A stretch of 64,000 bases of DNA from Octopus sinensis (taxonomy: Eukaryota), in NCBI RefSeq assembly GCF_006345805.1, contig NC_043009.1, positions 57,040,001 through 57,104,000 of the forward strand, written 5' to 3'. A program made the translations under genes and the position numbers. Below are positions 4,718-54,240 of this stretch, piece by piece (position 1 is the first letter of the stretch; each line of letters starts with the position of its first letter). Under the pieces are notes generated by a model. That model ran no database searches, was not told where the DNA came from, and worked only from the letters and a program-made list of their open reading frames with translations.

Positions 4718-6464
4718 TGCTGAACCAAATACCACAGAGAACTTTATCCTACGCAGTAACAACTCCACCAATTCGCCATTTCTCATTCTATTTGTAATAG
4801 TGTAATCCCTTTCCTCTCTGATTCTGCATTTTATTATTTCAGCTAAATTTATATTCTTTATGTGGAGGTGTGTGTGGCTTAGGGTGTCAGCATCATGATC
4901 GTAAGATTGTGGTTTCAATTCCTGGACCGGGAGACGCATTGTGTTCTTGAGCAAAACACTTCATTTTACATTGTTCCAGTCCACTCAGCTGGCAAAAATG
5001 AGCAACGCTGCGATGGACTGGCGTCCCATCCAGCTGAGGAACACATACGCCATTGAAACCGGGAAAACCGGGCCCATGAGCCTGGCTAGGCTTTAAAAGG
5101 GCACATTTATTTAAAAAATTTTTTATATTCTTCATATATTAATGTTCTGGAGCGTTTTGGATGCTGTTGTAGTAATATTCTGGAGTGTTTTAATTGTGTC
5201 TGATGGGGGTAACCGTTCAAGTGGTAATGAAAATTAGAGTTTGCTGTGGTATCAAACAGCACATTTGCATGTTTAGATGGTCCTTCATTATAAGTGATTT
5301 TGGTCTGCTGTGTAGCTGGTCTGTGGGCATGATCTGTCATAACCTGTATTGATGTGATGTATGTTACTTGTGCAGAGGTCAGGCGCCAAAACATGAGTGG
5401 CAGGTTCAATAATGTATCTTATCTATATTGTTTGTATGAGACTGTTGATGCTTTGTTGTGGTTGTCAAGTGTGGTATTCCAAAATATTCTAAATAAGTAC
5501 ATATATTTATATTTTTTTCTCTATTGTGTATTTTGAATGTGTCTTGAAGTATATGAAGATGATGTATGTAACTTGTAGTATTTTTTTGTTCTATATTTAA
5601 AGGTATATTTGTCTTTCAGCATAATGGCAGGTTGTAGTTGTGGTGGGAAGTGGTTGGCCTGTGGTGTCATTAAGTCTATGGTTGTGCAACCACATTTATA
5701 AGTGTGTGGTTGGAGAAATTGGGCAGGTGTGGCTGTGTGGTAAGAAGTTTGCTTTCCAACCATATGGTTCCAGGTTCAGTCTCACTACAAGGCACCTTGG
5801 GCGAGTGTCCTCTACTACAGCCGCAAGGCAACCAAAACCTTGTGAGTGGAATGCACGTGTTTGTGCATCTGTGCATGCATCTGTGCGTGCATGTCTGTGT
5901 CTGTCTGTGTGTGTGCATGTCTGTGTCTGTGTGCGTGTCTGTCTGCTTGTGTGTGCATGTCTGTCTGTCTGCGTGCGTGCGTGTGTGTGCATGCATGTCT
6001 GCATGCATGCCTGTGCACGCATGCGTGTCTGTGTGTGCTTGCCTGTACGCGGGTGCGTGTACATGCGTGCATACATGTGTGTCTGTGCACATACGTGCTT
6101 GTGCACCTGCGTGCATGTCTGTGTGCGCTTGTGCGTCTGTGCATGCATCACTGTGCACGTATGTGTGTCTCTCTGTGTCCATGTGTTTCTGTGTGTATGT
6201 GTGTCTGACTGTCTGTCCACACCATCACTTGACAGCTGTTGCTGGTGTGTTTACACCCCCGTAACTTAGCAGTTCAGCAAAAGAAACTGATAGAATAAGT
6301 AACAGGCTTAAAAAAAATTTTTTTTTAAATACTGGGGTTGATTCATTTGACTAAAACTACATCAAGGTGGTGCCCCAAGATGGCCACAATCTACTTACCG
6401 AAAACAAGTACAAGAGAGAAGAAAAAATTGTGCCTAGAGAATCAAGGGAGGAAATAACTGTAAT

Positions 6465-6600: not shown

Positions 6601-8771
6601 ACTTGCGTGCCAGTGGCACGTGAAAAAACATTCAAGCGAGGTCATTGCCAGTACTGCCTGACTGGCCCTCGTGCCAGTGGCACATAAAAGCATTCACTAC
6701 ACTCTTGGAGTGGTTGGCATTAGGAAGGGCATCCAGCTGTAGAAACTCTGCCAGATCAGATTGGAGCCTGGTGCAGCCATCTGCTTTGCCAGTCCTCAGT
6801 CAAATCGTCTCACCCATGCTAGCATGGAAAGCGGACATTAAAGGATGATGATGATGATAAGCCTGGTGATCGGAGAGATGTGGTTGGCATTGCTAGATAA
6901 AGCAAAAAGCAATATGTTTAATCAAGACCACTGAGGTCGACTTTGTCTTTCATCCTTTTGGGGTTGATAAATTAACCACCAGTTGTCTACTAGGGTTGAT
7001 CTAATCAACAGGTTCCCTCCCAGAAAATTTCGGGCCCTGTGCCTAGAGTAGAAAAGAGTATGATTAATCAAGGATTTCTTACAGAGCAAGAGATTTATAT
7101 TATCAACTTTTCTGTTCCCATATTTCTGTTGAAATACACTGGCCTTTGTTTCAATCAATTTTGGAAATATTCTTTAATTCATTTTTCTTTTAGCTGTTTC
7201 AGTCATTTGACTGTGGTCATGCTGGAGCACCACCTTGAAGGGGGTTTAGTCAAACAAACCAACACCCAGTACTTATTTTTTGACCAACATAAACACACAA
7301 GAACCAGTTGTCAAGCAGTGATGGGGGGTACAAACACAAAGACACAAACACAAATTTGGAGTAGACAAAACAAGGGACAACTGATGAAGGGGAACGTTCT
7401 TTATGTTGCATGTTTCATTTCTGTTTGCTTTTTTCATTGTTCAAAAAAAAAGTTTGTTTTCTTTGTTTCTGTTTTTTATGTTTTCATTTCTCATTTTGTC
7501 TACATTTTTATGATGTCCTGTACCCATATATACATGTATATATACATAAATATGTAGGTATGTACGTATATGTATGTATATATGCATATATTTATATATT
7601 ATTTATATTATTATACGATCGAATGCCACTTATCCTTTTCCAAGAAAGTTTTATCATAATAATTAAGATGCACACTCTTATTCTATCTCTTTTCTTTCTA
7701 TCTTACTCTCTTGTTGTTCTTCCTTTCTGTTTTTCTCTCCTACCCTTTCCCTATTCTTCTCCTCTCCCCTTCACCATTCCTTCTCTCTCACTCTTCCTCC
7801 TTGACTCTCTCATTGCTCACACATGACCAACAGCCATCCACCTTCCTTTCTTCCACTTCCTTCCTAAAGACAAGACATGCTTTTATCCGTCTCTTCTCAA
7901 AGCTCATTTTTCCAGCGTTCACCACTTCTCATCGTCTTGGCTTAACAGCTGTCATCGTTTGTTTTTACTGTTTTGTTCTCACTGTCCTGTTTTTGTTACC
8001 ACTTTAACCCTCTGCAAAAAAATCCAAAATTTTATTTAATTTGCTTTACGGGTAGGACTGTTTTAACAAAGTCATGTCTTGTCCTTACCTTCAAAATGTG
8101 GAGTAGATAAAACAGGGGACAACTGATGAAGGGATTGTTTTTTATGTTGCATGTCTCATTTCTCTGTTTGTTTTTTCATTGTTCAAAAAAAGTTTGTTTT
8201 CCAAGTTTTGTGTCTTTGTTCTCTTTTCTCATTTTGTCAACGTTTTTTGATGTCCTGTACCCATATATGCATGTATATATACATATATATGTAACTATGT
8301 ACATATATGTATGTATATATGCATATATTTATATATTATTTATATCATTATATGATCGAATGCCACACATCCTTTTCCAAGTAAGTTTTACATACATACA
8401 TACATACATACTTACATACATACACACACACTTCTTTCAGTTTCCCTCAACCAAATCCACTCACAAGGTTTTGGTTAGCCCAAGGTTATAGTAGAAGACA
8501 CTTGCCCAAGGTGCCATGCAGTGGGACTGAACCAAGAACAATGTGGTTAGGAAGCAAACTTCTTACCACACAGCCACGCCTGCATTAGTAAAAATAATTA
8601 TGTCATTATTAAACTTATGCTTTGAGCATAAATTAACATGAAATTTTAATGAAAAGTTTTAATTTGGATCACATTAAACAGGAAGTTTGTATCATAGAAC
8701 CAAGGGCAGCCTCAGGTGGGTAGGTATCAAAAGGATTAAGGATAAGAATAAAGATTAAAAGATAAGCTTAC

Positions 8772-8806
8772 CTTGGCTTCCAGCCATTTTTGTCTTTCCC
8801 ACTCAT
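8772..8806 (-). CDS. Start-codon part of exon 8772-8924 of the same host gene (MSGKDKNGWKP-S)
   Basis: Exon bounded by acceptor tttatttatttttcAG (before 8924) and donor AAG|GTAAGC (after 8772). All three frames from the acceptor hit stops, so the 5' part is UTR. ATG at 8806 in AAAATG context opens 11 codons + 2 nt that splice in frame to 1838. Confidence 0.7.
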
Positions 8807-8950
8807 TTTTACAGAAACAAATGATGCAAACAGTCGAGATCTTTATTCAGATAAACTAAAGAAAAAGGTTGTAGTTGCCAAAACTATATCTGATGAAAGA
8901 CAGGTCAAAATTTTCTGTACACTTCTGAAAAATAAATAAAATTTTATATT

Positions 8951-9352
8951 ATACTAGCAGTATCGCCCGGCGTTGCTCGGGTTTGTAAGGGAAATAACTA
9001 TATAAGCATTTTTAGAGACGTAAAGTATAATAGCCATCTCAATATGGCTAACCACAAAGGGGGGGGGGTTACCGTAGCTTTTTACGTTCTGAGATTTAAT
9101 AATAAATTTTTAGAGAGTTACTTCCCTTATATATGCCAAAAATGCATTAAAAAATGGGAAAAATTGATGGTAAATTTTTTTTTAAATCGTAGACTCATCG
9201 TAGACGCGCGCTAATACCCAGAAGGGCTCGATATGAATCACGACTATAAGATACCCGGTTTTGGTTAAACTGCACCGCAAAATGTGGGAGTAGTTAGGAA
9301 TCTAAATCGTAGGAGACAGACAGCACACAACCTCTCTTTTATATATAAAGAT
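8951..9352 (+). mobile_element. Non-autonomous Helitron/Helentron-type element (Lep1/HINE-like)
   Basis: Begins atactagcagtatcgCCCGGcgttgCTCGGG (subterminal hairpin) and ends gacagacagcacacaacctctcttttatatataaagat; no coding capacity and no TSD seen. Confidence 0.6.
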
Positions 9353-9445
9353 ATGTATGGAGTCACCATTACCATTATTAGTATTATTATTATCTCCCTT
9401 TCATTCAACCTCTTTTTCCAGTCACCAATGGATACAGTTTAATAC

Positions 9446-9478
<33 letters not shown>

Positions 9479-11014
9479 ACACCATAGTCATCTCATAAAA
9501 TTTAGAATGACTTGGTAGCCTATACCATAATTTCATTGATTGTTTAATCTGTTAGCATTTAAACTGGCCGTATCAGGCCCAAATATTCTGTTTTAGGTTC
9601 AAGCTGGATACATCTGGTCATTCACTCCTACTCTCCAATGTCATTCTAAAAATATAGTCACATCACTGAAATCTCAAAGCTACAAGATAATGTATGAGGA
9701 ATTCAAAACAATGCGAATAAAATAAGGATTACATTTGACACAGAATAATATCAATGCTAAAAGGTTTATAACTGACCATATTTGGCCCATATATTCTACC
9801 TGCTTAATTTTCAAAATGGCTACATCCAGCCTTTCACACTTACCCAACAATGTCATTCTAAGCATAAATGATCATATCAATATCTCAATGCTACAAGATA
9901 ATGCATGGTTAATTCAGAAATGATGTGAATAAATAAGTATTACATTTGACAAAGTAATGTAAATGCTAAAAGGTTAAGGTGCCTGTGTAACCAAAAGCAG
10001 GCATAAGCATCCTCTCGGTCATCCCATACCTGATCCAGCTGGACATTCAACACGATCAAACACAAAGATCACATATCTTAGGTAAACAGAGAAGTGAATT
10101 GATGTGATATTCATATCGTTTCCAAGGACATTAGTGATGCAAATTTTGAAAAGAAAATAGCTCCATTCAGAGATTGAAACCTCTTCTCATGATCAGCTTA
10201 CCACTTGATCTATAAATAACACAGCAAATGGTAAGTGATACATCCAATACAAGTGTATCAATGACACTAAAAATTAAAATTAAATTCCATCTCATCTGGA
10301 GGTCAGAGAGGACTACAATGGTCGTTGTTGTCTTGTTGCTTCAAACTATAATCAACAACATATCACCTATGCAAACAACAATCAATGTATTGTAGAAATT
10401 GAATATCAGAGTGACAGAATGAACAACTCACATCATTTTCAGTGGGTAACTATAATGAAGATCTTCATGAAGAAACTAAACAATACACCAGGATAGTAGT
10501 TGTGATACCTGTGCCGGTGGTATGTAAAATACACCATCTGTACGTGGCCGATGCCAGCACCGCCTTGACTGGCTTCCGTACCAGTGGCACATAAAAAGCA
10601 CCATCTGTACGTGGCCGATGCCAGCGCTGCCTTGACTGGCTTCCGTGCCGGTGGCACATAAAAAGCACCAACCAATTGTGGCCATTGCCAGCCTTCCCTG
10701 GCACCTGTGCCAGTGGCACGTAAAAAGCACCTACTACACTCACGGAGTGGTTGGCGTTAGGAAGGACATCGAGCTGTAGAAACACTGCCAGATCAGACTG
10801 GAGCCTAATGCAGCCTCCTGGCTTTCCAGTCTCCGGTCGAACCGTCTAACCCATGCTAGCATGGAAAACGGACGTATGATGATGATGATGATTGAGGAAG
10901 TTGAGCACAAGACCAATAATGACAATGGTGACTCTTTACAGATTTCAACAACAAATGGTCTATCTGTCTCTTTGATCAATGGAACTATCAATAGAGTAAG
11001 TGGCTGAGTATTCC

Positions 11015-11234: not shown

Positions 11235-12890
11235 ATCAGTGGTTCTTGACCATTTTCTTGTACCCCCCACCTCTTACCTTAAGTAGTTGCTGTGCCTTGC
11301 ACCCACCTAAGTGACGAATGAGGTATCACAACTTAACTAACTTAACATGGATGATAATTTATAAACTTTACTCTAGAAATGGATTCTATAAACTTTTAAC
11401 AGTGAAATGATAAAAAAAATTTATTCTTTTATTTATTTCAGTCATTTGACTGCGGCCATGCTGGAGCACTGCCTTTAGTCGAACAAATCAATCCTAGGAC
11501 TTATTCTATCGATCTCTTTTGCCAAACCACCAAGTTAGAGGGACGCGGACACACCAACATTGGTTATCAAGCAATGGTGGGCAGGGGGAAGACACACACA
11601 CACACATGATGGGCTTCTTTCAATTTCCGTCTACCAAATCCACTCACAAGGCTTTGGTCAACCTGAGGCTATAGTAGAAGACACTTGCCAAAGGTGCCAT
11701 GCAGTGGGACTGAACCTGAAACCATGTGGTTAGCAAGCAAGCTACTTTATTTCAAAAATTTTGCCATAAAGGCATGACACAGAGTAGCTTGCGGGCTGGA
11801 CAAATACATTGATGAGGTGAATGATGAAAAGGACGATATTAATGGGAGAAGACAAAAACACCCGCCAGTCCTTTGCTTCTCTAAAACATTATTCTCTTCT
11901 TTTTTTCAAAGAAAAAGACAAAACGAGGTAATGAACCTCTTACTTCAGTTTTACAATTATTGGACAGTGAAGATGTCATTGTGACATCTGTGGTTTTACA
12001 GCAAGGGTGTCACTGTGACAGTTGTAACATCATAGCAAGTGTCTCATTGTGACAGCTGTGACATAATGAATATGTCATCGTGACTGCTGTGGTGTCACAG
12101 TAAGGGTGTCATGACAGTCAGTGTGTCATTGAGACAGTTATGACATCACAGAGAGAGAGAGAGAGAGAGAGATAATATTGCAGCTGGGATGCATTAATGA
12201 GGGTGTCAACAGTGACGCCAGTATGTCACTATTTGGGCTTTGTCAGTAGTGTGCACCCATGCCAATCACATGCTAAGACAAAATCTATGACTACTGGTAT
12301 AGAAAAACAGTGACTGAGAAATCACTAGTGTTGCAATTTGCCACCGAAATACACAAAAATGTGCATCTGTCATTCTCTCCAATGCTGCTGGACAATTTTT
12401 GTCAGTTGCTGATGTATTTGTGTTTTAAATAAAGCGACATCCATAAGAAATATTATCTTCAGATGAATACCACATTTAATTTGTCTTCAGCAATGTATTT
12501 GCATTCTGTATGATGCACAGATAGTTATTTTAATCTAATACCAGTTTTGTTGCACATAAAGGATTTTATTCAGCCAGACAGCTAATTTCAAAATCAGTGA
12601 TTGAAAAATCATTGTTTTCCTATATCAGTAGTAATGGATTTTTTTCTTGGCATGTAGTTGACAGTGTGCACATGTTACAGAAAAATACCTAAAGAGGCAG
12701 AAATGTGCATCTAACATTCTCACACTGTTGTTGGATGATTTTTGTCAACTACTGATATGTTTGTTTTTAACCACAGTAAGTTTATAAGGGATATTATTTT
12801 CAGGTGAACAGCACAAGTACTTCGCTTTTTGTAATGTGTGAAGACACATAGGCTAGTGGTTAGGGTATTCAGCTCTCAATCGTATGGTCA

Positions 12891-13098
12891 GCCGTTCAAG
12901 AATTTGGACCTGGAGATCTCCATTTCCAGCAACATCGAGGGCCACCTTCCAGTGGTGTCGGGCGTCAACGTAGAGCCCTCGACTACAACAAGAAGACCAA
13001 AGTTGTTTTTTTTGTTTCCAAAGTCTGTGGTCTCCTGCCCCTAAGCCCTAGACCATCACCTAATCACCCTTACCCGTCTTGTTGCTTAACAACAACAA
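12891..13098 (+). mobile_element. 5'-truncated retroposon 3' end with (AAC)n tail, inserted into a tRNA-like SINE head
   Basis: 14-bp TSD caatcgtatggtca at 12877-12890 and 13099-13112; host reads ggctagtggttagggtattc...[insert]...tgagttcaattcctggc. Confidence 0.75.
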
Positions 13099-14682
13099 CA
13101 ATCGTATGGTCATGAGTTCAATTCCTGGCAGTGCATTGTATCCTTAAGACACTTTACTTCACATTGCTCCAGTCCATTCAGCTGGCAAAAATGAGCTGCA
13201 CCAGTAATTCAAAAGGGACAGCCTTGTCACTTTCTGTGTCTCACTGAATTTCCCTGAGAACTCTGCTAAGGGTATGCGTCTGTGGAGTGCTCAGCCACTT
13301 GCATGTTAATTTTGCAAGGGGGCAGTTCTGTTGATCAAATGAACTAGAACACTTGTTGTCATGAATAAGCCAGAACACTTGTCAAAGAGCCAGGCTGAAA
13401 CATATTTCCATTTTGTATCATACACAGGTGGCTATTTAAATCTATTTCTATTGCACATAATGGATTTTATTCAGCTAGACAGCTAATTTTAACATCAGTG
13501 ATTGTTCAGTCTCTACTTTTCTACACCAGTCATGAAGGATTCTGCATAGCATGCAGCTCACTTGGGTACATACTACTAACCAAGCCCAAAGACAGAGAGA
13601 AATCTACATCTAGCAATCTCACTACTGCTGCTGGTATATTTACAGTTTTAAATACAGCATGTCCATAACAGATGTTATCGCTGGACAAATACCACAGTTA
13701 ATGTATTATACATCAAGTATAATACACAGATGCTATTTTAGTCTAATACAGCTTCTGTTATACATAATGGATTTTTATTCTGACCAAATCCCTGTAGCTG
13801 TATCCAACTGAACTCACTTTTGTCTAATACATGGTTATTTACGCTACATCACACAAGCATTTGTGACCAATATCATTTAATGTCCACTATAGCTTAGCAT
13901 TAGGAAGGGCATCCAGCAGCAGACTCCATGTCACAACAGACAGTTGGAGTTTGGACAGCTCCAATGCTAGCCAGTTCCATGTCAAACTGTCCAACCCATG
14001 CCAGCACAGAAAGCAGACATTAAGTAATGCTGATGCTGCTGCTGATGATGATGATGATATTCCAAGCCTGCAGGAGTCAGGTTTTCTATGGCTGGATGTC
14101 CTTCCTGTTGCCAACCCTCACTCATTTCCAGACAAAGCAAAGTAATATTTCTCCATGGCCAGACATGCTTTACACAGAAGACTGGAAATGAACAACACCA
14201 CTTGTACCCCATCTGGTGCTCATTTACAATCATCATATGATGTCAAGACAAGCATATACAGTAACACCCACACACACACGATGGGCTTCTGTTTACCAAA
14301 TCTGCTCACAAGACAAAGTAATAACACCCCCACCACATCACCGTCATTATAGATTAACTAATAACACACACACACAAACAAACACCAGCTGCTCATAGTC
14401 TTCTCGGCTCATTAAATGTGTTGTCACCTCTTCTCAACAGCTGCTTCTGTTGATTTTAAAATTAAAAGTTGGTAAATAAATCGACATTGTTTGGTCATTG
14501 GTTTAACTGGCCAAACAAAACAGAATAGCTTTACTGAGCTTGGCCTTTTATACCAGTAGTTCTCAACCACAGCTACCAGGGATGGATGCAGTCCCTGAGC
14601 ATCCTTCTAGCAGCTCCTAACAGTTTTCCCTCCATAGTGGCATGTAAAAAAAAAAAAAAAAAAAAAAAAATCAACCTTTGAA

Positions 14683-27134: not shown

Positions 27135-27170
27135 CTTTTATCTTACCCTTATACACCAAATGGGCCAAAA

Positions 27171-27404
27171 GATGTGACTGGCAAGTGTTGTGGATTTACT
27201 GTGTTTCTCGTATCTAAAAGAATTGAGATGAGCGGCATATTGCTGTTTAAAATTTATGGTTGACCCTCCATATATAGCTGTAGAATTGTGTAATGTGTTG
27301 AGGACAGTGCATTTATAAGTTACATTAGATCTTTTACAATGGGTTTGTAGAGGGCAGCTGGACCCAGGACAGCAGTTACAAGTGGGTGTATTTAGGGGAT
27401 TATT
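27171..27404 (-). pseudogene. Penelope-like GIY-YIG endonuclease fragment (78 codons, not in the supplied ORF track)
   Basis: Hand translation NNPLNTPTCNCCPGSSCPLQTHCKRSNVTYKCTVLNTLHNSTAIYGGSTINFKQQYAAHLNSFRYEKHSKSTTLASHI aligns motif by motif with the 51563-52021 ORF (CxC..C..C, V.YKCT, Y(I/G)G.T.NF, H..SF, TTL..(K/H)I). No ATG; the catalytic Arg position reads Gln. Confidence 0.8.
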
Positions 27405-28042: not shown

Positions 28043-28090
28043 GTCTCTGATGAAGGTATATCCATAATATCCCAGAAATAGCTGTAAGAC
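28043..28090 (+). ncRNA. Minimal type I hammerhead ribozyme (Penelope-type)
   Basis: GUCU-CUGAUGA-a-GGuAUAU-ccaua-AUAUcCC-a-GAAA-UAGCU-GUA-AGAC. Stem I GUCU/AGAC; palindromic AGCU in stem III; GUA triplet. Confidence 0.8.
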
Positions 28091-28322
28091 TATATCTATA
28101 TCTTTTTGCTTATAAATGTCCTGAAAACTACTCACAGTCTTGGGTTTGTTATCACATTTTGCCTAATATATATATATATGCATGTATATATATATATATA
28201 TATATATATATGGAACGAGGGCATTTGAATATAACTGCGAATATAATAGGCCGAACTACTCGTATCTTTGACTTCGTGTTAATATCTGGCGTGCAGTTCG
28301 ACAAATTATATTTTATGACGAA

Positions 28323-44085: not shown

Positions 44086-44584
44086 GAAGGAGTTATACTC
44101 TAAGTTTGTTTCTCTGGTATAGAGAGTATATATCTAAGGCATTAAAATAAGGATGAAGAAGTGTACAGCCACAAAGCTTGTTTATTACAGTCTTAAATAC
44201 AATATAATCCCTTTAAATCATGGCAGGACACATGTCCTTCCTGAGTGAGCTTTCAGTATTTCACTGTAGCAAGGAATGATTCTAACTCACCAGCATAGTT
44301 ATTAACTTGCTGCCTCACAAAGCTGTCTGTTTTTTTTTATTTAAGATGCATACATAGCAGATTTCTGAAGACCTTTTATACAAAAGCCTAGATTCTTAAG
44401 TCTAGGGTAGCAGTAAACGTCCAGTACTTAAAACATGGAGGAAAACGAAAGTTGTCAAGGAATTGTATAGTTTTAGGATGAACCTCAAGGTAAAACTTAC
44501 AGAAGTGCATGAAGTTCAGCTTCATGGCAGAAGAAACCAGACAAGGTTTTGCTTGTATCTCTGTTATTGAGCTACCATCCTTGC

Positions 44585-46350: not shown

Positions 46351-49170
46351 AATTCTTTTTTATTGGCCACAAGGGCTGACACGCATGATTACATAAAGGG
46401 AAAAGACAGGACGAAAGGTTACAAAGGGTTTTGCCGTTTTTGAAAAACATTGAGTAAAAACTTTATAACAATAATTATAAAACAATGAAAAACTCCCAAA
46501 AGGGGGAGACGTTTCGAAAGGTTCCTGGTGGAAAAAACCCTACAAAAGCCAACGGGAGCCTGGTCAAAAAAGGGGTGTAGAGAGTCCCTTTTTTCTCCTT
46601 TTGTATTACTTTTTTGAAATCACAGGCGAAACCTGAGAACTGGTCCATTTATACTGGCCAGTCTCGCACAATTCACCCACCTTTCATAAAACTTGCTATC
46701 GGACAGCACTTTCCTCTCTAACCTCATCTTCCTTTTCAAGTGAAACTTGAAAAAGTTGATGAGGCCTTGACCAAAGAGGAAAGTGTCTGACTTTAGCCCT
46801 TTCAAATGAGTCCACCACACCACCTCTTTCGCCACAGCCACTAGGCACAAGAAAACGGCCTCGCCCTCCTTGTTAAAGGAGGTCGGCGGGGCAATCTTCA
46901 CTATGGATTCGGCCGATAGTCGGATCTGTCCTACACGTGACAGTAGCTGTTCGACATAAACCTATATTTCAGCAATACTCGGGCACTGGACGAGTGCGTG
47001 CAGAACGGTTTCGTCGTCCTGGTAACACCTCGGGCAGGCCCGGCTGACGGCACTTCCGTGCCGATACAGTTTATCTCGAACAGGCAGAGCCCCTCGGTAG
47101 CGCTGCCAGGCGAGCGACCTCTGGAAATTATCCATCGGCCCCGGCCCGAAAGTCCTCCCGAACAGACCGCTCAGTTCGTCGTCTTCAACGCCTATAGTTT
47201 CCCCGAGAACGTCGTCGCATTTTTCCTCCACTAACCCTCTATAGAACGCTAGAGTGCAGCTGTAACCGATCGCATTGCCCGCCTGACGGAGGGCGGAGAG
47301 GGCTTGACGGCACTCGAGGTGCCAAGCGCCCTTTCTCGGTCTACGTTTGATCCAGGTCTGCAGCTCCGTCAAAGAGACGAGCTGCGGAAAATTGCGTCTG
47401 ACAAAAGACGACCACACCTGTTCACCGTCTAGGAAGCGCTTGAGATGCCGCAGCCTGAGCGCATGTCTGCGCAACAGCAACCACGGCATTCCAAGGCCTC
47501 CATTCAGCGGTCGTTGACAGCAGATGGATCGCCTGACCAGTGGCACCTGACCCTTCCACAAAAAGTCGAAGACCAGGCGTACCAGCCTGGCCAACCAGCG
47601 GTCGGGACAAGGGACGACGGTCAAGCGGTAATAGATGACGGATGCGATGTACGCATTCGCCACCTCCGCTCGACCTTTCAGAGACAGCTTCCTCTCGGCA
47701 CATTTCTGGGTGAGACGTGCAACCCTGCTCGTCACCTCTTCCCAGTTCTTATCCACCTGGAGGTCCGGACCGAACCAGACCCCGAGCAATTTAACGGGTC
47801 CGTCTGTCCAGCGCCCTACGACACTGTTGGACGGCATGGGCTTGCCTCTCCAGGTGCCCAGTTGCAAGCCCACAGACTTTTCCGCATTAATCTTTGCCCC
47901 TGTCACAGCTTCGTACTGGTTTAGTGTCTCGCCAATCAGGCCAATGTGCCTGTGGCTCGACACCACCACGGTGACGTCGTCGGCATAGGCAGACACGCTG
48001 TTTCCGCCTCCTAGATTGCGCAGGATACCCCTCAAAGCCTCCAACTTGCGCAGTAATGGCTCGAGAGTCAAAATGTACAAGAGGGAGGAGAGAGGGCATC
48101 CTTGGCGGACCGAACGCGAGATGTCGAACGGTTCCAAAAGGTGACTGTTCACCCGTATCACCGAGCAGATGTTGCTGTATAAAGCAGCTATCCACCCGCG
48201 GAACACTGGACCGAAGCCGGCTGCCTTGAGGACAGCTGCCAGGTACCGATGGTCGACCCTATCGAAGGCTTTACTCTGATCCAAATTGATCAAAGCCCTA
48301 CCCGCGCCAGCGTCATTACCCACCCTCTCTATGATGTAGCGCATGAGATGGAGGTTGTCGTGTATCGACCTGGTCGGCACGGCGCATATCTGCGTCTTGC
48401 CAACCAGCTTGTCCATGACAAGCGCCAATCTCTTGGCTAGCACCTTGGCCAAAATCTTCAACTCTGCATTGAGCAGTGTGATGGGCCGGAAATTCCCTAT
48501 AACGTCCCCCTTGTTTGGGTCCTTCTTCAGCAAAGCCACCACCCCTCGACAGACAAAAGCAGGAATTCTCCCTTTTTACTGCCAGTTGCAGTAGACGTTT
48601 GCCAACAGGCCCGCAAACAAGTCTGGCATTGAAAAGTAAAGCTCGTAGGGCAGACCATCCAAACCCGGCGATCTACCTCTCGTGCAACTCTTCATCACTT
48701 CCTGTACTTCCCAGGCAGATATCGGTCCTTCGCAGCACTCTGCCTCGCTGTCCGAGACTTGTGGTAGGCCGTCCAGGTACACACCGAAGTCTGCACCGTT
48801 GTCCATTCCACCGCTCATCCCAAACAGTTGAGCAAAGTGCCGCTGAAGCACCGTATACATCTGCTTCGGTTCGGTAACCTCGCGCCCGTTCTGGTCCACC
48901 AAAGACCGAATGGTTGCTTTGTTGCCTCGCTTCACCTCCGCCACGCGGGCCCATCGAGCGGCTCTAGTCCCCTCCCCGCTTAGCGAACGTGCCTTAGCTC
49001 TGACAACGCAGCCTTCGTGTTTGGCGTTGAAGTGTTGGTCGAGGGCCAACCTTGCCGCCAACACGTCGGTCGCGATGCCAGTGTCAAGAGCCTCGTCTAG
49101 TTTCTTAACTAAATCCCGCTCTCTCTTCCTACGTTCAATAGCTAGAGTCTTACTATACCTAATCAACTTA
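46351..49170 (-). mobile_element. Tx1/L1-clade LINE, 5'-truncated, ORF2 interrupted only by two in-frame stops
   Basis: ORFs 48576-49259, 46962-48542 and 46620-46901 share one frame. Motifs GRSPGLDGLP.E.Y, NFRPITLLN, LDQSKAFDRVDH, VRQGCPLSSLLY, YADD, and C-terminal CPRC...ETVLHALVQC zinc knuckle; no endonuclease domain left; (AAT)n on both sides. Confidence 0.93.
46962..48542 (-). CDS. Tx1-like reverse transcriptase (largest open segment, 526 aa; pseudogenic in context)
   Basis: Complete RT motif set as above; bounded by premature TAA (48576) and TAG (46962). Confidence 0.85.
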   Translation of the reverse strand: MVALLKKDPNKGDVIGNFRPITLLNAELKILAKVLAKRLALVMDKLVGKTQICAVPTRSIHDNLHLMRYIIERVGNDAGAGRALINLDQSKAFDRVDHRYLAAVLKAAGFGPVFRGWIAALYSNICSVIRVNSHLLEPFDISRSVRQGCPLSSLLYILTLEPLLRKLEALRGILRNLGGGNSVSAYADDVTVVVSSHRHIGLIGETLNQYEAVTGAKINAEKSVGLQLGTWRGKPMPSNSVVGRWTDGPVKLLGVWFGPDLQVDKNWEEVTSRVARLTQKCAERKLSLKGRAEVANAYIASVIYYRLTVVPCPDRWLARLVRLVFDFLWKGQVPLVRRSICCQRPLNGGLGMPWLLLRRHALRLRHLKRFLDGEQVWSSFVRRNFPQLVSLTELQTWIKRRPRKGAWHLECRQALSALRQAGNAIGYSCTLAFYRGLVEEKCDDVLGETIGVEDDELSGLFGRTFGPGPMDNFQRSLAWQRYRGALPVRDKLYRHGSAVSRACPRCYQDDETVLHALVQCPSIAEI

Positions 49171-49209
49171 ATAATAATAATAACAACAACAATAATAATA
49201 ATAACAATG

Positions 49210-49243
<34 letters not shown>

Positions 49244-50004
49244 GTGTTATCATGTACATTGTTTTGTCTGTGTTATCATGTACATTGTTTTGTCTGTGTT
49301 ATCATGTACATTGTTTTGTCTGTGTTATCATGTACATTGTTTTGTCTAGGTATAAAAGATGGGCTACAGCAAATATTCTGCTCAATACCACAGATTTGCT
49401 TGTCAGTTGTTTGACTTTAACCAGTTGAACATGTCCCATCTGCAAGGTCATGATGACATTTATCTTGATATAAGATCACCATGTCGCGCACATATGGTTG
49501 TGATGCATGTGCCTGGTGTACCTTTATCAGACGGGTAGTCATGATGGGTATATTGGACTTTGTATATTTTACCCCAGTGTCACTTTGATGGCATGAACTG
49601 CTCTCTCACTCAATAATAATATAATAATAATAATAAGTGTTATCATGTACATTGTTTTGTCTGTGTTATCATGTACATTGTTTTGTCTGTGTTATCATGT
49701 ACATTGTTTTGTCTGTGTTATCATGTACATTGTTTTGTCTAGGTATAAAAGATGGGCTACAGCAAATATTCTGCTCAATACCACAGATTTGCTTGTCAGT
49801 TGTTTGACTTTAACCAGTTGAACATGTCCCATCTGCAAGGTCATGATGACATTTATCTTGATATAAGATCACCATGTCGCGCACATATGGTTGTGATGCA
49901 TGTGCCTGGTGTACCTTTATCAGACGGGTAGTCATGATGGGTATATTGGACTTTGTATATTTTACCCCAGTGTCACTTTGATGGCATGAACTGCTCTCTC
50001 ACTC

Positions 50005-50048: not shown

Positions 50049-51562
50049 TAATAATAATGATAACGAGGGGAAGAAGAAGAATCTACAATCCATGAAAAAA
50101 ACTTTTACATGGTTTCTGTCTCTCTATCTTCTCAGTTTCGATCATAAAGCTTGCATCAACCTGGAAGCTATAAAAAAAAAAGACGCCCAATGGGATTGAA
50201 CTCTGAAACTCAGTTTTTAGAAACAAACTTCTTAACCAGTTCGTCATACTGCATTGACATACCCACCATCGGCTGTTGACACTCACATTATTATAGTCAC
50301 CAATCCAACTATTATAAGCATATAACAATCATCACTTTACACCAGATTTAACCCTTGCGATACCAACCCAGCTGAAACCACCCCTGGCTCTGTAGTATAA
50401 ATGTCTTGTTTTCATAAGTTTTGAATAAAAATCTTCCATGAAAACTTAGTCACAATTTATGATCCTTACACCAGCTTAATGATAACTAAGTTATTTTACT
50501 AAATTCTTTGTTATATTTAAAATTAATTGAAAGAAACACAAAGCATCTCAAAATAAATACAGTAATGAAAGGGTTAATATCACCAATGGGCCTTTGGTAG
50601 CTTTTATTGAATCTACTCTGCTGTAGACATCTGAAGGAGCACTCTAGTGAATGCATAACTCTATCTTTTCTTCGTATCACTTTCAGAGTCCCTGAAAAGC
50701 CCATCAGTATTGCATTTTTTCCTCTGTTTAAACCTTCAGCATTTAAACCAGCCATATCCAGCCCAAATATTCTGTCTGTTTCATGTCCAATCCAGCCAGA
50801 CAAGGCTTTGCACACCTACCTTATAATGTCGCTTTGGAGATGAACAATTACATCATTGAACTCTCAAGTCAACGTCAATAAATCTGCATTACATTTGACC
50901 GAGTAATCCTGAATGCTAAAGGGGTAAACCAGGAGTGCCCACCCAGTTGACTACAATCAATTTGATTGTGAAGCAACATTTGGTTAGTCATGGAGCAATG
51001 ATCTATACATTTTGTATAATAAGTAAGAGAAAATATGTGAAGCATATTTCCCATTCACAAATCCCATTAAATTTAAATACAAAATAATTATGAATGATAA
51101 GAATCAACTTCAATGCCTGCATGTGTTTAGCTACCAGTAATTATGAATGTAGTTTTGTCACCATTACAGGAGATATACATACAATATATATATATCATCA
51201 TCATCATCATCATCATCGTCATCGTTTAATGTCCGCTTTCCATGCTGGCATAGGTTGGACAATTTGACTGAGGGCTGGTGAACCAGAAGGCTGCACCAGG
51301 CTCCAATCTGATCTGGCAAAGTTTCTACACCTGAGTGCCCTTCCTAATGCCAACCACTTCGAGAATGTAGTGGGTGCTTTAATGTGCCACCGGCACGAGG
51401 GCTAGTCAGGTGGTACTGGGATCGACCATACTCAAATGGTGCTTTTTACGTGCCACCGGCACAGGAGCCAGTCATGCGACACTGGCAACGATCACACTGG
51501 TGCTTATATATATATATGATAATCATGATAATCAAAATAACAGGAACATAAGACACCTATCC

Positions 51563-52021
51563 ATGAATAATCCAACATCTGAAGTTGTTCCTACTGCATG
51601 TAAGTGTAGAATTAAGTCAAAATGCCCGGCACCTGGTCTATGCGGGGTAAATAACGTAATCTATAAATGTACCATATCTACTGAGAATAACAAATTTTTT
51701 TACATTGGTTGTACGATAAATTTTAGAGATAGAGTTAGAAATCACGTCTCATCTTTTAAATTACGTCATAAAGCTGGTACCACCACACTTTCAAATAAGA
51801 TCTGGGAACTCAAAAATAATAATAGGAATTATAACCTTAATTGGGAAATAGTTAGAAGAGCAATGCCGTATAAAAATAACAGGGTTGGTTGCCAACTCTG
51901 CTCCATGGAGACGTATGAAATTCTAAAGCATAGAAAAAATAAGGGTTTGTTAAATAACCATATTGAATTAGGTCAAGTTTGTGTCCACGCTAAATTGAAG
52001 ACTCTAAAATATTTTAAATGA
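51563..52021 (+). CDS. Intact Penelope-like GIY-YIG endonuclease, 152 aa, with no adjacent RT
   Basis: MNNPTSEVVPTACKCRIKSKCPAPGLC..NVIYKCT..FYIGCTINFRDRVRNH..SF..TTLSNKIWELK..WEI..AMPY..CQLCSMETYEI..LLN..EL..CVH..LK*. GIY (VIY) and YIG motifs, conserved Arg/Glu/Asn and Cys/His Zn ligands. The ORF-track start at 51410 lies inside a family C repeat; the first own ATG is 51563. Confidence 0.85.
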   Translation: MNNPTSEVVPTACKCRIKSKCPAPGLCGVNNVIYKCTISTENNKFFYIGCTINFRDRVRNHVSSFKLRHKAGTTTLSNKIWELKNNNRNYNLNWEIVRRAMPYKNNRVGCQLCSMETYEILKHRKNKGLLNNHIELGQVCVHAKLKTLKYFK

Positions 52022-53320
52022 ATATCCGTATAGAATAATTCATAACAAGATAGATAGATAGATATAACTGGTTTTTACTAGTATAGCATAACTTTAATTT
52101 TTTAAGTAGATAACTGCGAACTCTCACACTACAGTTATTTTTTTCTTTATAACTGCACCTGATTTTGAGCACAAGGAAACAAATAGTACTTGTACGTTGC
52201 TTAAATGAGGTTTTATTTAATTTTAAAATTAAATTTTAATTTTTAATTTAATTTAATCTAATTTAGGTAACACAACTTTAATAAAATAAGTTACTAAGGC
52301 TTCATAATTCTATTACAAAATTAAATAAGTAATGCTACTCCCTTGAAAGTAGTATGAGAAATTTCAGTATAATAGACAATTCCCTCACACCTTGTAAACT
52401 ATTGACCTGTAGTCTGTCAATGTATAGATAGTAACGGCAACAATTTAAGACAGTAACAGTAATAAATAAATAAATAAATTTAAATGACCTCTTGTTAGGA
52501 TTGCACTTATTTTTTTCTCTTAATGTATTTCCTTTTGATGATAGCCTTTGACCCCTCTATCCCTGACTTTATTATCTTTTTAGATTCTCATATCTGCTTT
52601 CAGCTACGCCAGGTTGACAATAAATAGCTGTTTATTGATCAAAAATAATATTCTCCTTATAGTTCTTAGATTCCTGCAAATTTCGAAGCCAGCCAGGCCG
52701 TCTACAAATTCTTCTGTGTAGTTGGTCACCTGCGACCCCTTTTCCCTCTCAGTTGTCACAGTATACTCTATGTGGGCGTTTTTTCTTTCTCCCTTCTTTC
52801 TTTTTTCTTTTTCTTTTTTCTTTTCTTCTCCCCTTTTTTCTTCTCCCCTTTTTTCTTTTTTTTCCTTTTTCTTTTTTCTTTTTTCTTTTTCTTTTTTTCC
52901 TTTTCCTTGTCTCTTTTCTTCTCTTTCCTTTCTTTTCTTTTCTTTGCTCCACAAAAATTCCTTCAGCCTTTAGAAGTCATAACATAGCAATCTTGTGAAG
53001 AGAACAGTAATGTGACAAATACCTTATCATATAGCATGAAATTATACCCACCTCATTGTGGATTAACCATGGATAAATTATTCGTCTGTGAGTATGAAAT
53101 TCCTCCTCATATCTCTGGAAATTTACATCTACACTACGGATTAATTCACCTTCTCTGTGAAGCTAATAAGCTTTTTTTAAAAACCTGTGATAAGACTGTG
53201 CATCATCATTAAAGAACTTTGGAAGTCTGTTTACAACCTAAATCTGCTTTTAATGAAATTATCTCCAATACTTCATGAGTATAGCCTCACCCACTAAGAT
53301 GTTTGGAGAACTCATATGTG

Positions 53321-53411
53321 TTTTAGCTGATGAGTACGGGACACTTTTATCTGCTGCAATATTTGCAACTTTTAATAAAGCCTGTCTTTGTATGAAACAA
53401 TTGTACTAAAA
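53321..53411 (+). ncRNA. Type I hammerhead ribozyme with long multi-segment stem II
   Basis: UUUUAG-CUGAUGA-GUAC-GGGACA-CUUUUAU..UGCAA-uau-UUGCA..AUAAAG-cc-UGUCUU-u-GUAU-GAAA-CAAUU-GUA-CUAAAA. Perfect 6-bp stem I, palindromic stem III, GUA triplet. Confidence 0.85.
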
Positions 53412-53451
53412 ACTAATCCATTCTTGTTGCTTCTTTCTCGTGTATATATAT

Positions 53452-53505
<54 letters not shown>

Positions 53506-53507
<2 letters not shown>

Positions 53508-53805
53508 GGGGTTGGACAAAAGAATGGAAACACCTAGCATCATAATTTTGAAATATCTATAAAACCATCAAAAGCTTGTCTATTTTTATTTTTAGTGTTG
53601 CTTAATATGTTTTGCTAAAATTGCTGTTTCTTTTCAGATATCATCAGAAAAAGGTAATTAAAATTACTTAGCAACACTAATAATAAATCAAAAAAACATA
53701 AAAATCAAAAAACATAAAAATAAACAAGCTTTTGACAGTTTTATAGATATTTCAAAATTATGATGCTATGTTACTAGGTGTTTCCATTATTTTTCCCAAC
53801 CTCTG
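53506..53805. mobile_element. Tc1-like MITE with long (~95 bp) TIRs
   Basis: caggggttggacaaaagaatggaaacacctagcatcataattttgaaatatctataaaac... is mirrored by ...gttttatagatatttcaaaattatgatgct..ctaggtgtttccattatttttcccaacctctg. Confidence 0.8.
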
Positions 53806-54240
53806 TGTGTATTATACACACACACACACACACATATTGAATATATTTTATATATACATATATCATCATCATCATCATCATCATCATCGTTTAGCATCCT
53901 TCTTTCATGCTGGCATGGGTTGGATGGTTTGACAGGAGCTGGCCAGGCTAGAGCCTGTGCCATGCTTCTAAATGTGTTTTGGTATGGTTTTTTTATGGTT
54001 GGATGCTCTTCCTGTCACCAACCACTCCGTAGAGTGGGGTGAGTGCTTTTTACGTGGCATTCACACAGGTGAGGTTAACTTTGGCTTGTTTTTTTTTCTA
54101 CAGCTGGATGTCCCTTCAAATGCTAACCACTTTACATTGTGGACTGGGTGATTTTTACGTGGTACCTGCACTGGCAGGGTCACCAAGTGAGTTTGCAAGG
54201 CAAAGGGGCTTTGAGAGGAGAGGAAGCATTGGAGGAAGTG

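What the first reader, a model, noticed from the sequence alone, without database searches (positions are those of the whole stretch)
51505..53445. RT-less Penelope-type unit: intact GIY-YIG nuclease ORF plus a downstream self-cleaving hammerhead
Seen: a ~1.9-kb plus-strand unit carries an uninterrupted 152-aa GIY-YIG ORF with its own ATG and all catalytic-type residues (VIY/YIG, R, E, N, Cys/His ligands). It is followed by AT-rich and pyrimidine-rich tracts and a well-formed hammerhead at 53321-53411, then (TA)n. No RT lies next to it. Known: Penelope-like elements (PLEs) pair an RT with a GIY-YIG domain and carry hammerheads in their terminal repeats. Inference: this is either a plain 5'-truncated PLE, or a distinct non-autonomous class that keeps its own nuclease and ribozyme and borrows an RT. 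An intact ORF among heavily decayed neighbours fits either recent insertion or selection.
Basis: partly seen in the sequence, partly recalled or inferred. Interest (0 to 1): 0.8.

Follow-up and report, generated by a model that had tools for sequence, protein, structure and literature searches.

The report
Truncated octopus Penelope-like retrotransposon copy
This is an ordinary, dead-on-arrival fragment of a known kind of jumping gene (a Hydra-clade Penelope-like retrotransposon) in an octopus genome: it kept only the nuclease end and the ribozyme-bearing tail because copying stopped early, not because it is a new kind of element.

Summary
The sequence features are real. There is a 152-codon open frame at 51563-52021 that models as a GIY-YIG nuclease, a long 3' UTR, a hammerhead-type motif at 53321-53411, and (TA)n on both sides.

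The unit is the 3' third of a Penelope-like element (PLE) of the Hydra clade (Craig et al. 2021). Two Octopus sinensis relatives (L001, L002) continue upstream into one long ORF. That ORF carries RWK, DKT and YRDD motifs. A 34%-identical full-length relative folds like telomerase reverse transcriptase (RT).

In the window, homology starts at 51518, inside the Asn-rich linker and directly after a (TA) run. No Hydra-type RT is found anywhere in the 64 kb. The 'own ATG' is a Leu codon in both relatives.

The nuclease has the Hydra signature: CxCX5C, then CxxC...E...N...CxH.

The hammerhead is below Rfam's threshold (19.4 bits; gathering score 34). It is still far beyond chance under a descriptor search. 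It is conserved in four octopus copies with three compensatory pairs, and it sits where related Hydra elements carry compact hammerheads.

The idea of a separate nuclease-keeping non-autonomous class is not supported. Verdict: ordinary 5'-truncated PLE copy, low interest.

The parts
51505..51517 (.). (TA)n run at the 5' junction. It is what remains of the target microsatellite. A SINE (51187-51504) sits in the same microsatellite just upstream.
   Evidence: Sequence read directly. A short (AT) run also lies at about 51174-51186, before the SINE.
51518..53442 (+). 5'-truncated copy (1.9 kb) of a roughly 4.3-kb Hydra-clade Penelope-like element.
   Evidence: blastn: 51516-52679 matches L001 10212-11318 (71%) and 53175-53446 matches L001 11654-11910 (79%). 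tblastn: only aa 647-809 of the 809-aa L001 ORF are present.
51518..52021 (+). Remnant of the single RT-EN ORF: the end of the Asn-rich linker plus the complete C-terminal GIY-YIG endonuclease and the stop codon. The first ATG in the remnant is at 51563.
51599..51643 (+). Linker Zn-finger-like motif CxCX5C(X5C): residues C13, C15, C21, C27 (CKCRIKSKCPAPGLC).
   Evidence: Invariant or nearly invariant columns. This motif is named as the Hydra signature in PMC8557442.
51656..51745 (+). GIY-YIG catalytic core, first half: VIY (Y34), FYIG (Y47, G49), R57, H61.
51890..51988 (+). Second half of the nuclease: CxxC (C110, C113), E116, N131, CxH (C140, H142).
   Evidence: The motif order is as described for Hydra EN.
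52022..53174 (+). 3' UTR. It includes a pyrimidine-rich low-complexity stretch (52793-52945) that the L001 copy does not share.
53175..53442 (+). Terminal repeat region (pLTR equivalent). L001 has this segment in inverted orientation upstream of the ORF. L002 has it in direct orientation upstream.
53321..53411 (+). Type-I hammerhead motif. Helix I: 53321-53326 with 53406-53411. CUGAUGA: 53327-53333. Helix II: 53334-53340 with 53387-53393, enclosing a 46-nt insert that holds a hairpin at 53353-53369. GAAA: 53394-53397. Helix III: 53397-53398 (A15.1, the last A of GAAA, plus C15.2) pairs with 53403-53404, closing the loop AAUU (53399-53402); the whole 53397-53404 stretch is the palindrome ACAAUUGU. 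Predicted cleavage lies between 53405 and 53406.
53443..53504 (.). (TA)31 at the 3' junction: the target microsatellite.

Best explanation
The unit is a solo, 5'-truncated insertion of a Hydra-clade Penelope-like retrotransposon in an octopus genome.

What is shown: the family relationship, the truncation point and the motifs.

What is inferred, from published PLE biology, is the mechanism. A full-length element of about 4.3 kb encodes one protein: a telomerase-like RT, then a linker, then a C-terminal GIY-YIG nuclease. The nuclease cuts AT-rich DNA, here a (TA)n microsatellite. The RT copies the element RNA from near its 3' end by target-primed reverse transcription. In this insertion, synthesis stopped or switched template after about 1.9 kb. 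Only the nuclease-coding end, the 3' UTR and the terminal repeat with its hammerhead were therefore copied.

The fragment has no RT, no upstream promoter region of the element and no conserved start codon, so it is most likely inert. Its ORF is still open because the insertion is not old enough to have been disrupted.

The hammerhead is the family's normal cis element. It is of the minimal type, with a palindromic helix III that is thought to act as a dimer on multimeric transcripts. Its role in transposition is unknown. In the one PLE tested in vitro (PAc, a Poseidon-group PLE) it was not needed for insertion.
For: 1. Relatives extend into an RT. L001 has an 809-aa ORF (8255-10684) that stays open upstream to about 7916. 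It carries RIRWKTYH, ADKTGN and GLYRDDAL. L002 has MKKVNIEF...RIRW...ADKTGN...GLYRDDAL plus a terminal EN ORF.

2. The L001 ORF hits 18 full-length relatives at E=1e-65 to 1e-105. The AlphaFold model of one of them, P0003 (pLDDT 87.7), matches TERT best (3du5, E=6e-9), followed by other RTs.

3. The window holds only aa 647-809 of that ORF. Homology starts directly after a (TA) run.

4. The Hydra-clade signatures published in PMC8557442 are present: DKT, RWK, CxCX5C, CxxC/CxH flanking E and N, (TA)n target and a hammerhead.

5. The PLE hallmark of an inverted, 5'-truncated partner copy is present in L001, L006, L007 and L008. It is described as typical in PMC8557442.

6. Hammerhead. Four octopus copies give 92% paired cells, against 35-53% for slid controls. 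Three pairs show compensatory changes, including the palindromic loop AAUU to GAUC. Related elements L006 and L007 carry compact hammerheads 90-165 nt after the EN stop codon, with the same GAAAC-palindrome-GUA layout.

7. The mechanism statements rest on PMC11167929 and PMC4209133.
Against: The RT assignment by sequence profile is weak. Pfam RVT_1 matches only 2 of 20 family members, best E=0.0044, and the L001 ORF itself gets no RT hit. The assignment therefore rests on motifs and on the fold of a 34%-identical relative.

Clade placement was judged from motifs, not from an RT phylogeny with reference Hydra sequences.

Only three octopus loci could be examined, so the distribution of 5' ends in this genome is unknown.

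The octopus element is longer (about 4.3 kb) than the '<3 kb' given for Hydra elements.

The hammerhead is below Rfam's threshold. Its activity is untested. The L002 copy has G at the cleavage position, which is normally inactive.
Confidence: 0.93

Rival explanations
1. A distinct non-autonomous element class. It would keep its own GIY-YIG nuclease and hammerhead, start at a defined 5' end, and borrow RT in trans from full-length PLEs.
For: The ORF is intact and keeps every conserved nuclease residue, whereas the two RT-bearing octopus copies carry small deletions in EN.

Public protein sets contain many nuclease-only ORFs of about 170 aa from this clade. Of 50 that contain the motif, 19 start at the same conserved Met (MxN[IM]..II..HN).

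Two of four such ORFs examined (L005, L006) have 5' ends only 18-36 nt upstream of that Met.
Against: The window copy does not start at that Met. It lacks the whole xN[IM]..II..HN motif and begins in the low-complexity linker. Its ATG is Leu in relatives.

In longer proteins the conserved Met is internal, and the previous Met lies typically about 80-120 aa upstream in the longer proteins. ORF callers therefore start at the conserved Met for any break within that stretch.

The four contexts examined differ from one another. One is a frameshifted full-length copy. One is truncated about 125 nt upstream. Two are truncated close to the Met and are fused to inverted partner fragments of different lengths.

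No second copy with the window's 5' end was seen.
Confidence: 0.04
2. A domesticated or host GIY-YIG gene: the ORF is kept by selection for a cellular function.
For: The ORF is uninterrupted. dN/dS against L001 is 0.37. NCBI annotates the L001 copy as a gene ('myelin gene regulatory factor-like A').
Against: That annotation is a gene model laid over a PLE copy.

The window ORF is embedded in contiguous TE sequence: 3' UTR, terminal repeat and (TA)n flanks.

The closest relatives are 71-73% identical TE copies at other loci, not orthologues.

Low dN/dS between TE copies is expected from selection on active elements.
Confidence: 0.02
3. The hammerhead-like motif is a decayed or chance motif with no ribozyme activity in this family. 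The conserved 3' end would then serve only RT recognition.
For: The Rfam score is 19.4 bits, well below the gathering score of 34, and the motif is invisible in whole-window scans.

Helix II is G-U rich and carries a 46-nt insert. One L001 copy has a 13-nt deletion in helix II. L002 has G at position 17.

The hammerhead fold is not the monomer minimum-energy fold.

PAc, the Poseidon-group PLE tested in vitro, inserts without hammerhead activity (PMC11167929).
Against: The descriptor match is absent from 150 random windows.

The core nucleotides are invariant in four copies that are otherwise 70-92% identical. Three pairs show compensatory changes, one of which keeps the helix III palindrome.

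The position and layout match the compact hammerheads in related Hydra elements.

Craig et al. 2021 report hammerheads throughout the clade and note cases where the two core halves lie 35-50 nt apart.
Confidence: 0.3

Closest known systems
Hydra clade of Penelope-like elements (Craig, Yushenova, Rodriguez & Arkhipova 2021, PMC8557442)
   Same: A single ORF with RT followed by a C-terminal GIY-YIG EN. RWK and DKT motifs. A CxCX5C linker. CxxC and CxH around the conserved E and N. No conserved CCHH. Insertion into (TA)n. A hammerhead in the terminal repeat. Hosts are aquatic invertebrates, including molluscs.
   Different: The octopus family is about 4.3 kb rather than under 3 kb. The extra length comes from an Asn-rich low-complexity linker of about 150-200 aa between RT and EN and a 3' UTR of about 1.2 kb. 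Its hammerhead has a helix II insert of about 33-46 nt. The window copy is only the 3' 1.9 kb.
Canonical EN+ PLEs (Penelope/Poseidon, Neptune, Nematis), e.g. PAc from Anolis (PMC11167929)
   Same: A telomerase-like RT plus a GIY-YIG EN. Frequent 5' truncation. Pseudo-LTRs that can be direct or inverted. Inverted partner copies. A preference for AT-rich targets. A hammerhead in the repeat.
   Different: Those clades have a CCHH motif in EN, DKG rather than DKT, and a different linker or none.
Minimal dimeric hammerheads of metazoan PLEs (Cervera & de la Pena 2014, PMC4209133)
   Same: Type I topology. Helix II of 7-8 bp. A short helix I. Helix III reduced to 1-2 bp with a small palindromic loop, which implies action as a dimer. 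Located in the PLE terminal repeats. Mostly found as single motifs in truncated copies.
   Different: Here helix II carries a long insert with its own hairpin, and the score against Rfam Hammerhead_1 is below threshold.
Animal non-LTR retrozymes (PMC7229834; bioRxiv 10.64898/2026.07.22.740005)
   Same: These are the known non-autonomous derivatives of PLE terminal repeats that carry hammerheads.
   Different: Retrozymes are short, non-coding and tandemly arranged. They keep neither RT nor EN. The window unit is a single coding remnant, not a tandem array.

Membership tests
Penelope-like elements (EN+) | RT of the PLE/telomerase-related type in the same ORF as the nuclease | tested here: met
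   Met for the family, not for the window copy, which lacks the RT. L001 and L002 ORFs carry RT-like motifs (FD..FY.SI, YRDD) upstream of EN. The model of relative P0003 matches TERT best (E=6e-9). The Pfam RVT_1 signal is only weak.
Penelope-like elements (EN+) | GIY-YIG endonuclease domain | tested here: met
   Pfam match just below the cut-off. Confident model whose best PDB matches are GIY-YIG nucleases, though with weak E-values. Y, Y, G, R, H, E and N are conserved.
Penelope-like elements (EN+) | Terminal repeats (pLTR), direct or inverted, with frequent 5' truncation and inverted partner copies | tested here: met
   L001 has an inverted 257-bp repeat. L002 has a direct upstream repeat. 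L006-L008 are head-to-head pairs. The window copy is a solo truncated copy.
Penelope-like elements (EN+) | Hammerhead ribozyme motif in the repeat | tested here: inconclusive
   The core and the three helices are present and conserved, with three compensatory pairs. The Rfam score is below threshold and cleavage is untested.
Hydra clade | DKG motif changed to DKT, and an RWK motif near the N-terminus | tested here: met
   L001 has RIRWKTYH and PADKTGN. L002 has RIRWITYH and PADKTGN. The family consensus shows RWK and ADKT. This cannot be tested in the window copy itself.
Hydra clade | Linker motif CxCX5C upstream of GIY-YIG | tested here: met
   The window has C13-K-C15-RIKSK-C21. These columns are invariant or nearly invariant.
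Hydra clade | [quoted passage not shown] | tested here: met
   C110-QL-C113, E116, N131, C140-V-H142.
Hydra clade | Absence of the CCHH motif of other PLE nucleases | tested here: met
   In the 59-sequence alignment no conserved Cys, and only one conserved His (H61), lies between Y34 and C110. I did not align against a canonical PLE EN, so the expected position of CCHH is taken from the paper's description.
Hydra clade | Insertion into (TA)n | tested here: met
   (TA) runs abut both ends in the window. The same holds at L001's 5' end, in L002 and in L006.
Hydra clade | RT groups with reference Hydra families in a phylogeny or clustering | not tested
   No reference Hydra or Repbase sequences were available. 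The paper's supplements are not held.
Hydra clade | Short elements (generally under 3 kb) | tested here: not met
   The L001 copy spans about 4.3 kb including the inverted repeat, or about 4.0 kb without it. The paper words this as 'generally', so it is not a strict criterion.
Non-LTR retrozymes | Short non-coding units in tandem, each with a hammerhead | tested here: not met
   Single copy, coding remnant, no tandem array.

The most novel reading that the evidence does not exclude
Truncated copies like this one, with an intact nuclease ORF and the RT-recognition/hammerhead 3' end, could be transcribed and mobilised in trans. They would supply their own nuclease, forming a semi-autonomous tier of Hydra-clade PLEs. 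The conserved Met before the xN[IM]..II..HN motif in the wider clade could then be a real internal start for a stand-alone nuclease.
Probability: 0.04. Interest if true: 0.55.

Novelty: new member of a known kind. Interest (0 to 1): 0.12.

Why it matters
It matters little on its own. It is a correct and useful annotation: a Hydra-clade PLE family in octopus, a clade described only in 2021 and poorly recognised by Pfam and Rfam.

Three practical points follow:
- NCBI gene models such as 'myelin gene regulatory factor-like A' in O. sinensis are PLE fragments.
- Rfam's hammerhead models miss the hammerheads of this clade, even the compact ones.
- Nuclease-only ORFs of about 170 aa in metagenome protein sets are mostly truncation and ORF-calling products.

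The enlarged helix II of the octopus hammerhead is a small structural variant that could be tested.

Tried and rejected
- **DNA transposon with terminal inverted repeats.** I considered this when L001 showed 257-bp inverted repeats 4.3 kb apart. I rejected it because the internal ORF is RT plus EN, the repeat is direct in L002, and inverted partner copies are a known PLE feature.
- **Rfam at the gathering threshold, and at E<=10 on 3 kb and on loci L001-L004.** No hammerhead was found. Only a 191-nt search gave a sub-threshold hit. Rfam also missed the compact hammerhead of L006, so its negatives carry little weight for this clade.
- **Sequence searches of PDB.** Neither the ORF, the EN profile nor the RT profile gave a useful hit.
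- **Pfam on the L001 ORF and on relatives.** No significant RT hit. Fold comparison was needed instead.
- **Exact look-up of the window protein in public assemblies.** It is not on record.
- **Looking for a continuation of the element upstream of the SINE, or an inverted partner, in the window.** None was found.
- **Supplementary tables of Craig et al. 2021, for octopus Hydra families.** They are not held.
- **First descriptor-shuffle script.** It timed out and was rerun.
Full report
**What is in the window**

An open frame ends at 52021. Its longest form starts at GTG 51410. The first ATG, at 51563, gives 152 aa.

Downstream lie an AT-rich stretch, a pyrimidine-rich low-complexity block at 52793-52945, a hammerhead-like motif at 53321-53411, and (TA)31 at 53443-53504.

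A short (TA) run at 51505-51517 lies directly upstream of the unit. Before that run sits a SINE (51187-51504), itself preceded by another (AT) run.

The host is an octopus. The only close protein in the 5.8-billion-protein index is an Octopus sinensis model.

**The nuclease**

Sequence evidence alone is thin. Pfam GIY-YIG gives E=5.4e-4, just under the curated cut-off. PDB gives nothing by sequence.

An exhaustive HMMER search found 3773 homologues at E<=1e-3 and 1027 at E<=1e-10.

In alignments of 31 and 59 homologues the window protein keeps every invariant and nearly invariant position. These are:
- C13-x-C15-x5-C21-x5-C27
- Y34
- Y47-I-G49
- R57
- H61
- C110-xx-C113
- E116
- N131
- C140-x-H142

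An AlphaFold model built on the 59-sequence alignment is confident, with pLDDT 88.6. Nine of its twelve best PDB matches are GIY-YIG nucleases: T4 EndoII, I-TevI, UvrC and Hpy188I. Their E-values are weak (>=0.1), with probability up to 0.91. I accept the GIY-YIG call.

**What the unit belongs to**

I fetched the locus of the O. sinensis protein (L001) and compared it with the window by blastn:
- Window 51516-52679 aligns to L001 10212-11318 (71%).
- Window 53175-53446 aligns to L001 11654-11910 (79%).
- The same terminal segment also occurs inverted at L001 7569-7839.

In L001 the nuclease is the C-terminus of an 809-aa ORF (8255-10684). The ORF stays open upstream to about 7916. It contains RIRWKTYH, PADKTGN and GGLYRDDAL.

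A second O. sinensis copy (L002) has the same layout. It starts MKKVNIEFSPKDIP and carries RIRW, ADKTGN and GLYRDDAL. A LINE fragment is inserted in its linker, and a terminal EN ORF lies at 13784-14350.

tblastn of the L001 ORF against the window finds only aa 647-809 (51503-52003). No RT part is present anywhere in the 64 kb.

The window's ATG aligns with Leu in both relatives: LSMNN in the window against LSLNN.

**Is the upstream part a reverse transcriptase?**

Pfam sees RVT_1 in only 2 of 20 family members, best E=0.0044. A PDB sequence-profile search finds nothing.

I therefore modelled a full-length relative, P0003. It has 718 aa, is 34% identical to the L001 ORF and matches it at E=9e-91. 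The model has pLDDT 87.7.

Its best PDB match is the telomerase catalytic subunit (3du5, E=6e-9). Further telomerases, DRT9, retron RTs, LINE-1 ORF2p and group II intron RT follow, with 115 matches at E<=1e-3. A telomerase-like RT fused to a C-terminal GIY-YIG nuclease is the definition of an EN+ Penelope-like element.

**Which clade**

Craig et al. 2021 describe the Hydra clade (PMC8557442, section 11). Its features are:
- a C-terminal EN;
- an RWK motif;
- DKG changed to DKT;
- no CCHH in EN;
- a linker changed to CxCX5C;
- insertion into (TA)n in almost all families;
- readily detected hammerheads;
- hosts in Cnidaria, Mollusca, Echinodermata and Arthropoda.

Every one of these that can be read from sequence is met (see the membership table).

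Two differences remain. The octopus element is about 4.3 kb, whereas Hydra elements are described as generally under 3 kb. The extra length comes from an Asn-rich linker of about 150-200 aa and a 1.2-kb 3' UTR. I also could not run an RT phylogeny against reference Hydra sequences.

**The truncation**

Homology begins at 51516-51518, inside the Asn-rich linker and directly after the (TA) run. Nothing upstream of the SINE resembles the element. The copy ends at 53442, against (TA)31.

The simplest history has three steps:
1. A (TA)n microsatellite existed at this site.
2. A 5'-truncated copy was inserted by target-primed reverse transcription.
3. A SINE landed later in the same microsatellite.

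High rates of 5' truncation, and inverted 5'-truncated partner copies, are described as typical of PLEs. I saw such inverted partners in L001 (257 bp), L006 (292 bp, 99%), L007 (1.8 kb, 95%) and L008 (850 bp, 97%). The window copy has none.

**The alternative: a nuclease-keeping non-autonomous class**

The exhaustive search returned many ORFs of about 165-175 aa. Of 50 that contain the motif MxN[IM]..II..HN, 19 start exactly at its Met. That pattern needed an explanation.

In longer proteins the same motif is internal. The position is Met in 17 of 31 cases. The previous Met is typically about 80-120 aa further upstream in the longer proteins. Any break within that stretch therefore makes an ORF caller start at the conserved Met.

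I looked at four such ORFs on long contigs:
- L007 is a full-length copy with frameshifts.
- L008 is truncated about 125 nt upstream of the Met.
- L005 is truncated 36 nt upstream of the Met and is joined to an inverted partner fragment.
- L006 is truncated 18 nt upstream of the Met and is joined to an inverted partner fragment of a different length.

The window copy does not even contain this motif. I find no support for a separate class, but three octopus loci cannot exclude one.

**Selection**

Nei-Gojobori dN/dS is 0.37 between the window and L001, and 0.13 between L001 and L002. This is what divergence between active lineages of a coding transposon gives. It says nothing about selection on the fragment itself.

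The window's EN is the best preserved of the three octopus copies. L001 lacks 6 residues and L002 lacks 7, including the conserved Arg. That fits a relatively recent insertion.

**The hammerhead**

The motif has the full type-I core:
- helix I: UUUUAG with CUAAAA
- CUGAUGA
- helix II: GUACGGG with UUUGUAU
- GAAA
- helix III: A-C...G-U closing the loop AAUU
- A17

Scores and controls:
- Rfam does not report it in window-scale searches.
- In a 191-nt search Hammerhead_1 aligns end to end at exactly 53321-53411, with 19.4 bits against a gathering score of 34 and E=0.023. My own rescaling of that E-value to the whole window gives roughly 8, so on Rfam alone it would not be called.
- A descriptor with the observed helix lengths matched 0 of 150 first-order Markov windows. 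A looser 5/5/2 descriptor matched 0.7% of them.

Conservation in four octopus copies (window, both L001 repeats and the direct upstream repeat of L002 at 9732-9846):
- The core is invariant.
- 92% of pair cells are standard pairs, against 35-53% for slid controls.
- Three pairs changed on both sides. One is the loop AAUU to GAUC, which keeps the 8-nt palindrome (ACAAUUGU to ACGAUCGU).

The shuffle controls are only moderately convincing: 15-57 of 500 shuffles reach the observed values, and there are only four sequences.

Related Hydra-type elements carry compact hammerheads in the same place and with the same layout:
- L006: CUGAUGA-GUGGGCCAAC...GUUGGCCUAC-GAAAC-AAAUUU-GUA
- L007: the corresponding compact motif

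These lie 90-165 nt after the EN stop codon and again in the inverted partners. For L006 the hammerhead is the minimum-energy fold. For the window it is not (-10.4 against -12.8 kcal/mol).

This matches the published minimal PLE hammerheads. Those have a long helix II, a short helix I, and a helix III of 1-2 bp with a palindromic loop. They have a presumed dimeric mode of action and low activity in vitro (PMC4209133). Craig et al. also note cases where the two core halves lie 35-50 nt apart.

Weaknesses:
- One L001 repeat has a 13-nt deletion in helix II.
- L002 has G at position 17.
- No cleavage data exist.
- In the only PLE studied in vitro, the hammerhead needed the element's protein and was dispensable for insertion (PMC11167929).

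**Verdict**

The unit is a solo 5'-truncated copy of a Hydra-clade PLE inserted in a (TA)n microsatellite, and it is most likely inert.

It is a new member (an octopus family, and here only a fragment of it) of a kind described in 2021. PLEs are already catalogued as a repeat class in Octopus vulgaris (PMC13282606). Interest is low.

Noticed in passing
window 51187-51504 and 53862-54000+: Two copies of an octopus SINE that starts with (ATC)n followed by 'GTTTAATGTCCGCTTTCCATGCTGGCATAGGTTGG'. The first sits in the same (TA)n microsatellite as the PLE fragment, directly at its 5' junction.
   Followed up: partly
window 53505-53806: A palindromic, MITE-like element of about 300 bp. Its 46-nt terminal inverted repeats begin CAGGGGTTGGACAAAAG, and it is complementary along almost its whole length. 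It lies immediately after the (TA)31 tract.
   Followed up: partly
window 27168-27386 (- strand): A second, much more diverged fragment of a Hydra-type PLE nuclease. It is 44% identical to aa 679-749 of the L001 ORF and is interrupted by stop codons.
   Followed up: partly
window 8890-8949, 28047-28145, 44365-44479 (+): Three weak hammerhead-descriptor matches (helix I 4 bp, helix II 3-4 bp), against 0.1 expected per random window. The one at 28047 lies about 650 nt from the decayed EN fragment at 27168-27386. They may be decayed PLE hammerheads or chance.
   Followed up: no
window 46962-48542 and 48576-49259 (- strand): An unrelated non-LTR (LINE) retrotransposon with a 526-aa RT-bearing ORF that is still open. 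The neighbourhood is therefore not uniformly decayed.
   Followed up: no
L001 10001-11308; L002 10001-67542: NCBI gene models in O. sinensis ('myelin gene regulatory factor-like A'; 'putative ankyrin repeat protein RBE_0319') include pieces of these PLE copies as exons. The first name most likely comes from the Asn-rich low-complexity linker.
   Followed up: partly
L001 about 9800-10270; L002 about 11990-13900: The octopus family has an Asn-rich low-complexity linker of about 150-200 aa between the xN[IM]..II..HN motif and the CxCX5C motif. Other clade members have only about 15-30 residues there. In L002 the linker also holds an inserted LINE fragment (12103-13314).
   Followed up: partly
L006 5684-5730 (+) and 4794-4748 (-): A compact, textbook-looking Hydra-clade hammerhead that is its own minimum-energy fold. 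Rfam did not report it even in a 381-nt search at E<=10. Rfam negatives therefore say little about hammerheads of this clade.
   Followed up: yes
L005 4918-4970 against 5185-5237: A 53-nt, 100%-identical inverted copy of an internal piece of the EN ORF sits exactly at the 5' end of a truncated copy. It looks like a snap-back or template-switch product rather than a normal inverted partner.
   Followed up: no
L002 27574-27492 (-) and 15379-16590 (+): Other PLE material in the same O. sinensis locus. One item is a hammerhead-like motif with the palindrome ACGGCCGU and a 59-nt helix II region. The other is an ORF with a different, canonical-looking PLE GIY-YIG (IIYCISY...FIGQTGRRL..R..EH) inserted downstream of the Hydra-type copy.
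   Followed up: no
proteins P0021-P0169: In public protein sets, 19 of 50 nuclease ORFs of this clade that contain the motif begin at the same conserved Met of MxN[IM]..II..HN. ORF calling on truncated copies explains this, but a real internal start was not excluded.
   Followed up: partly
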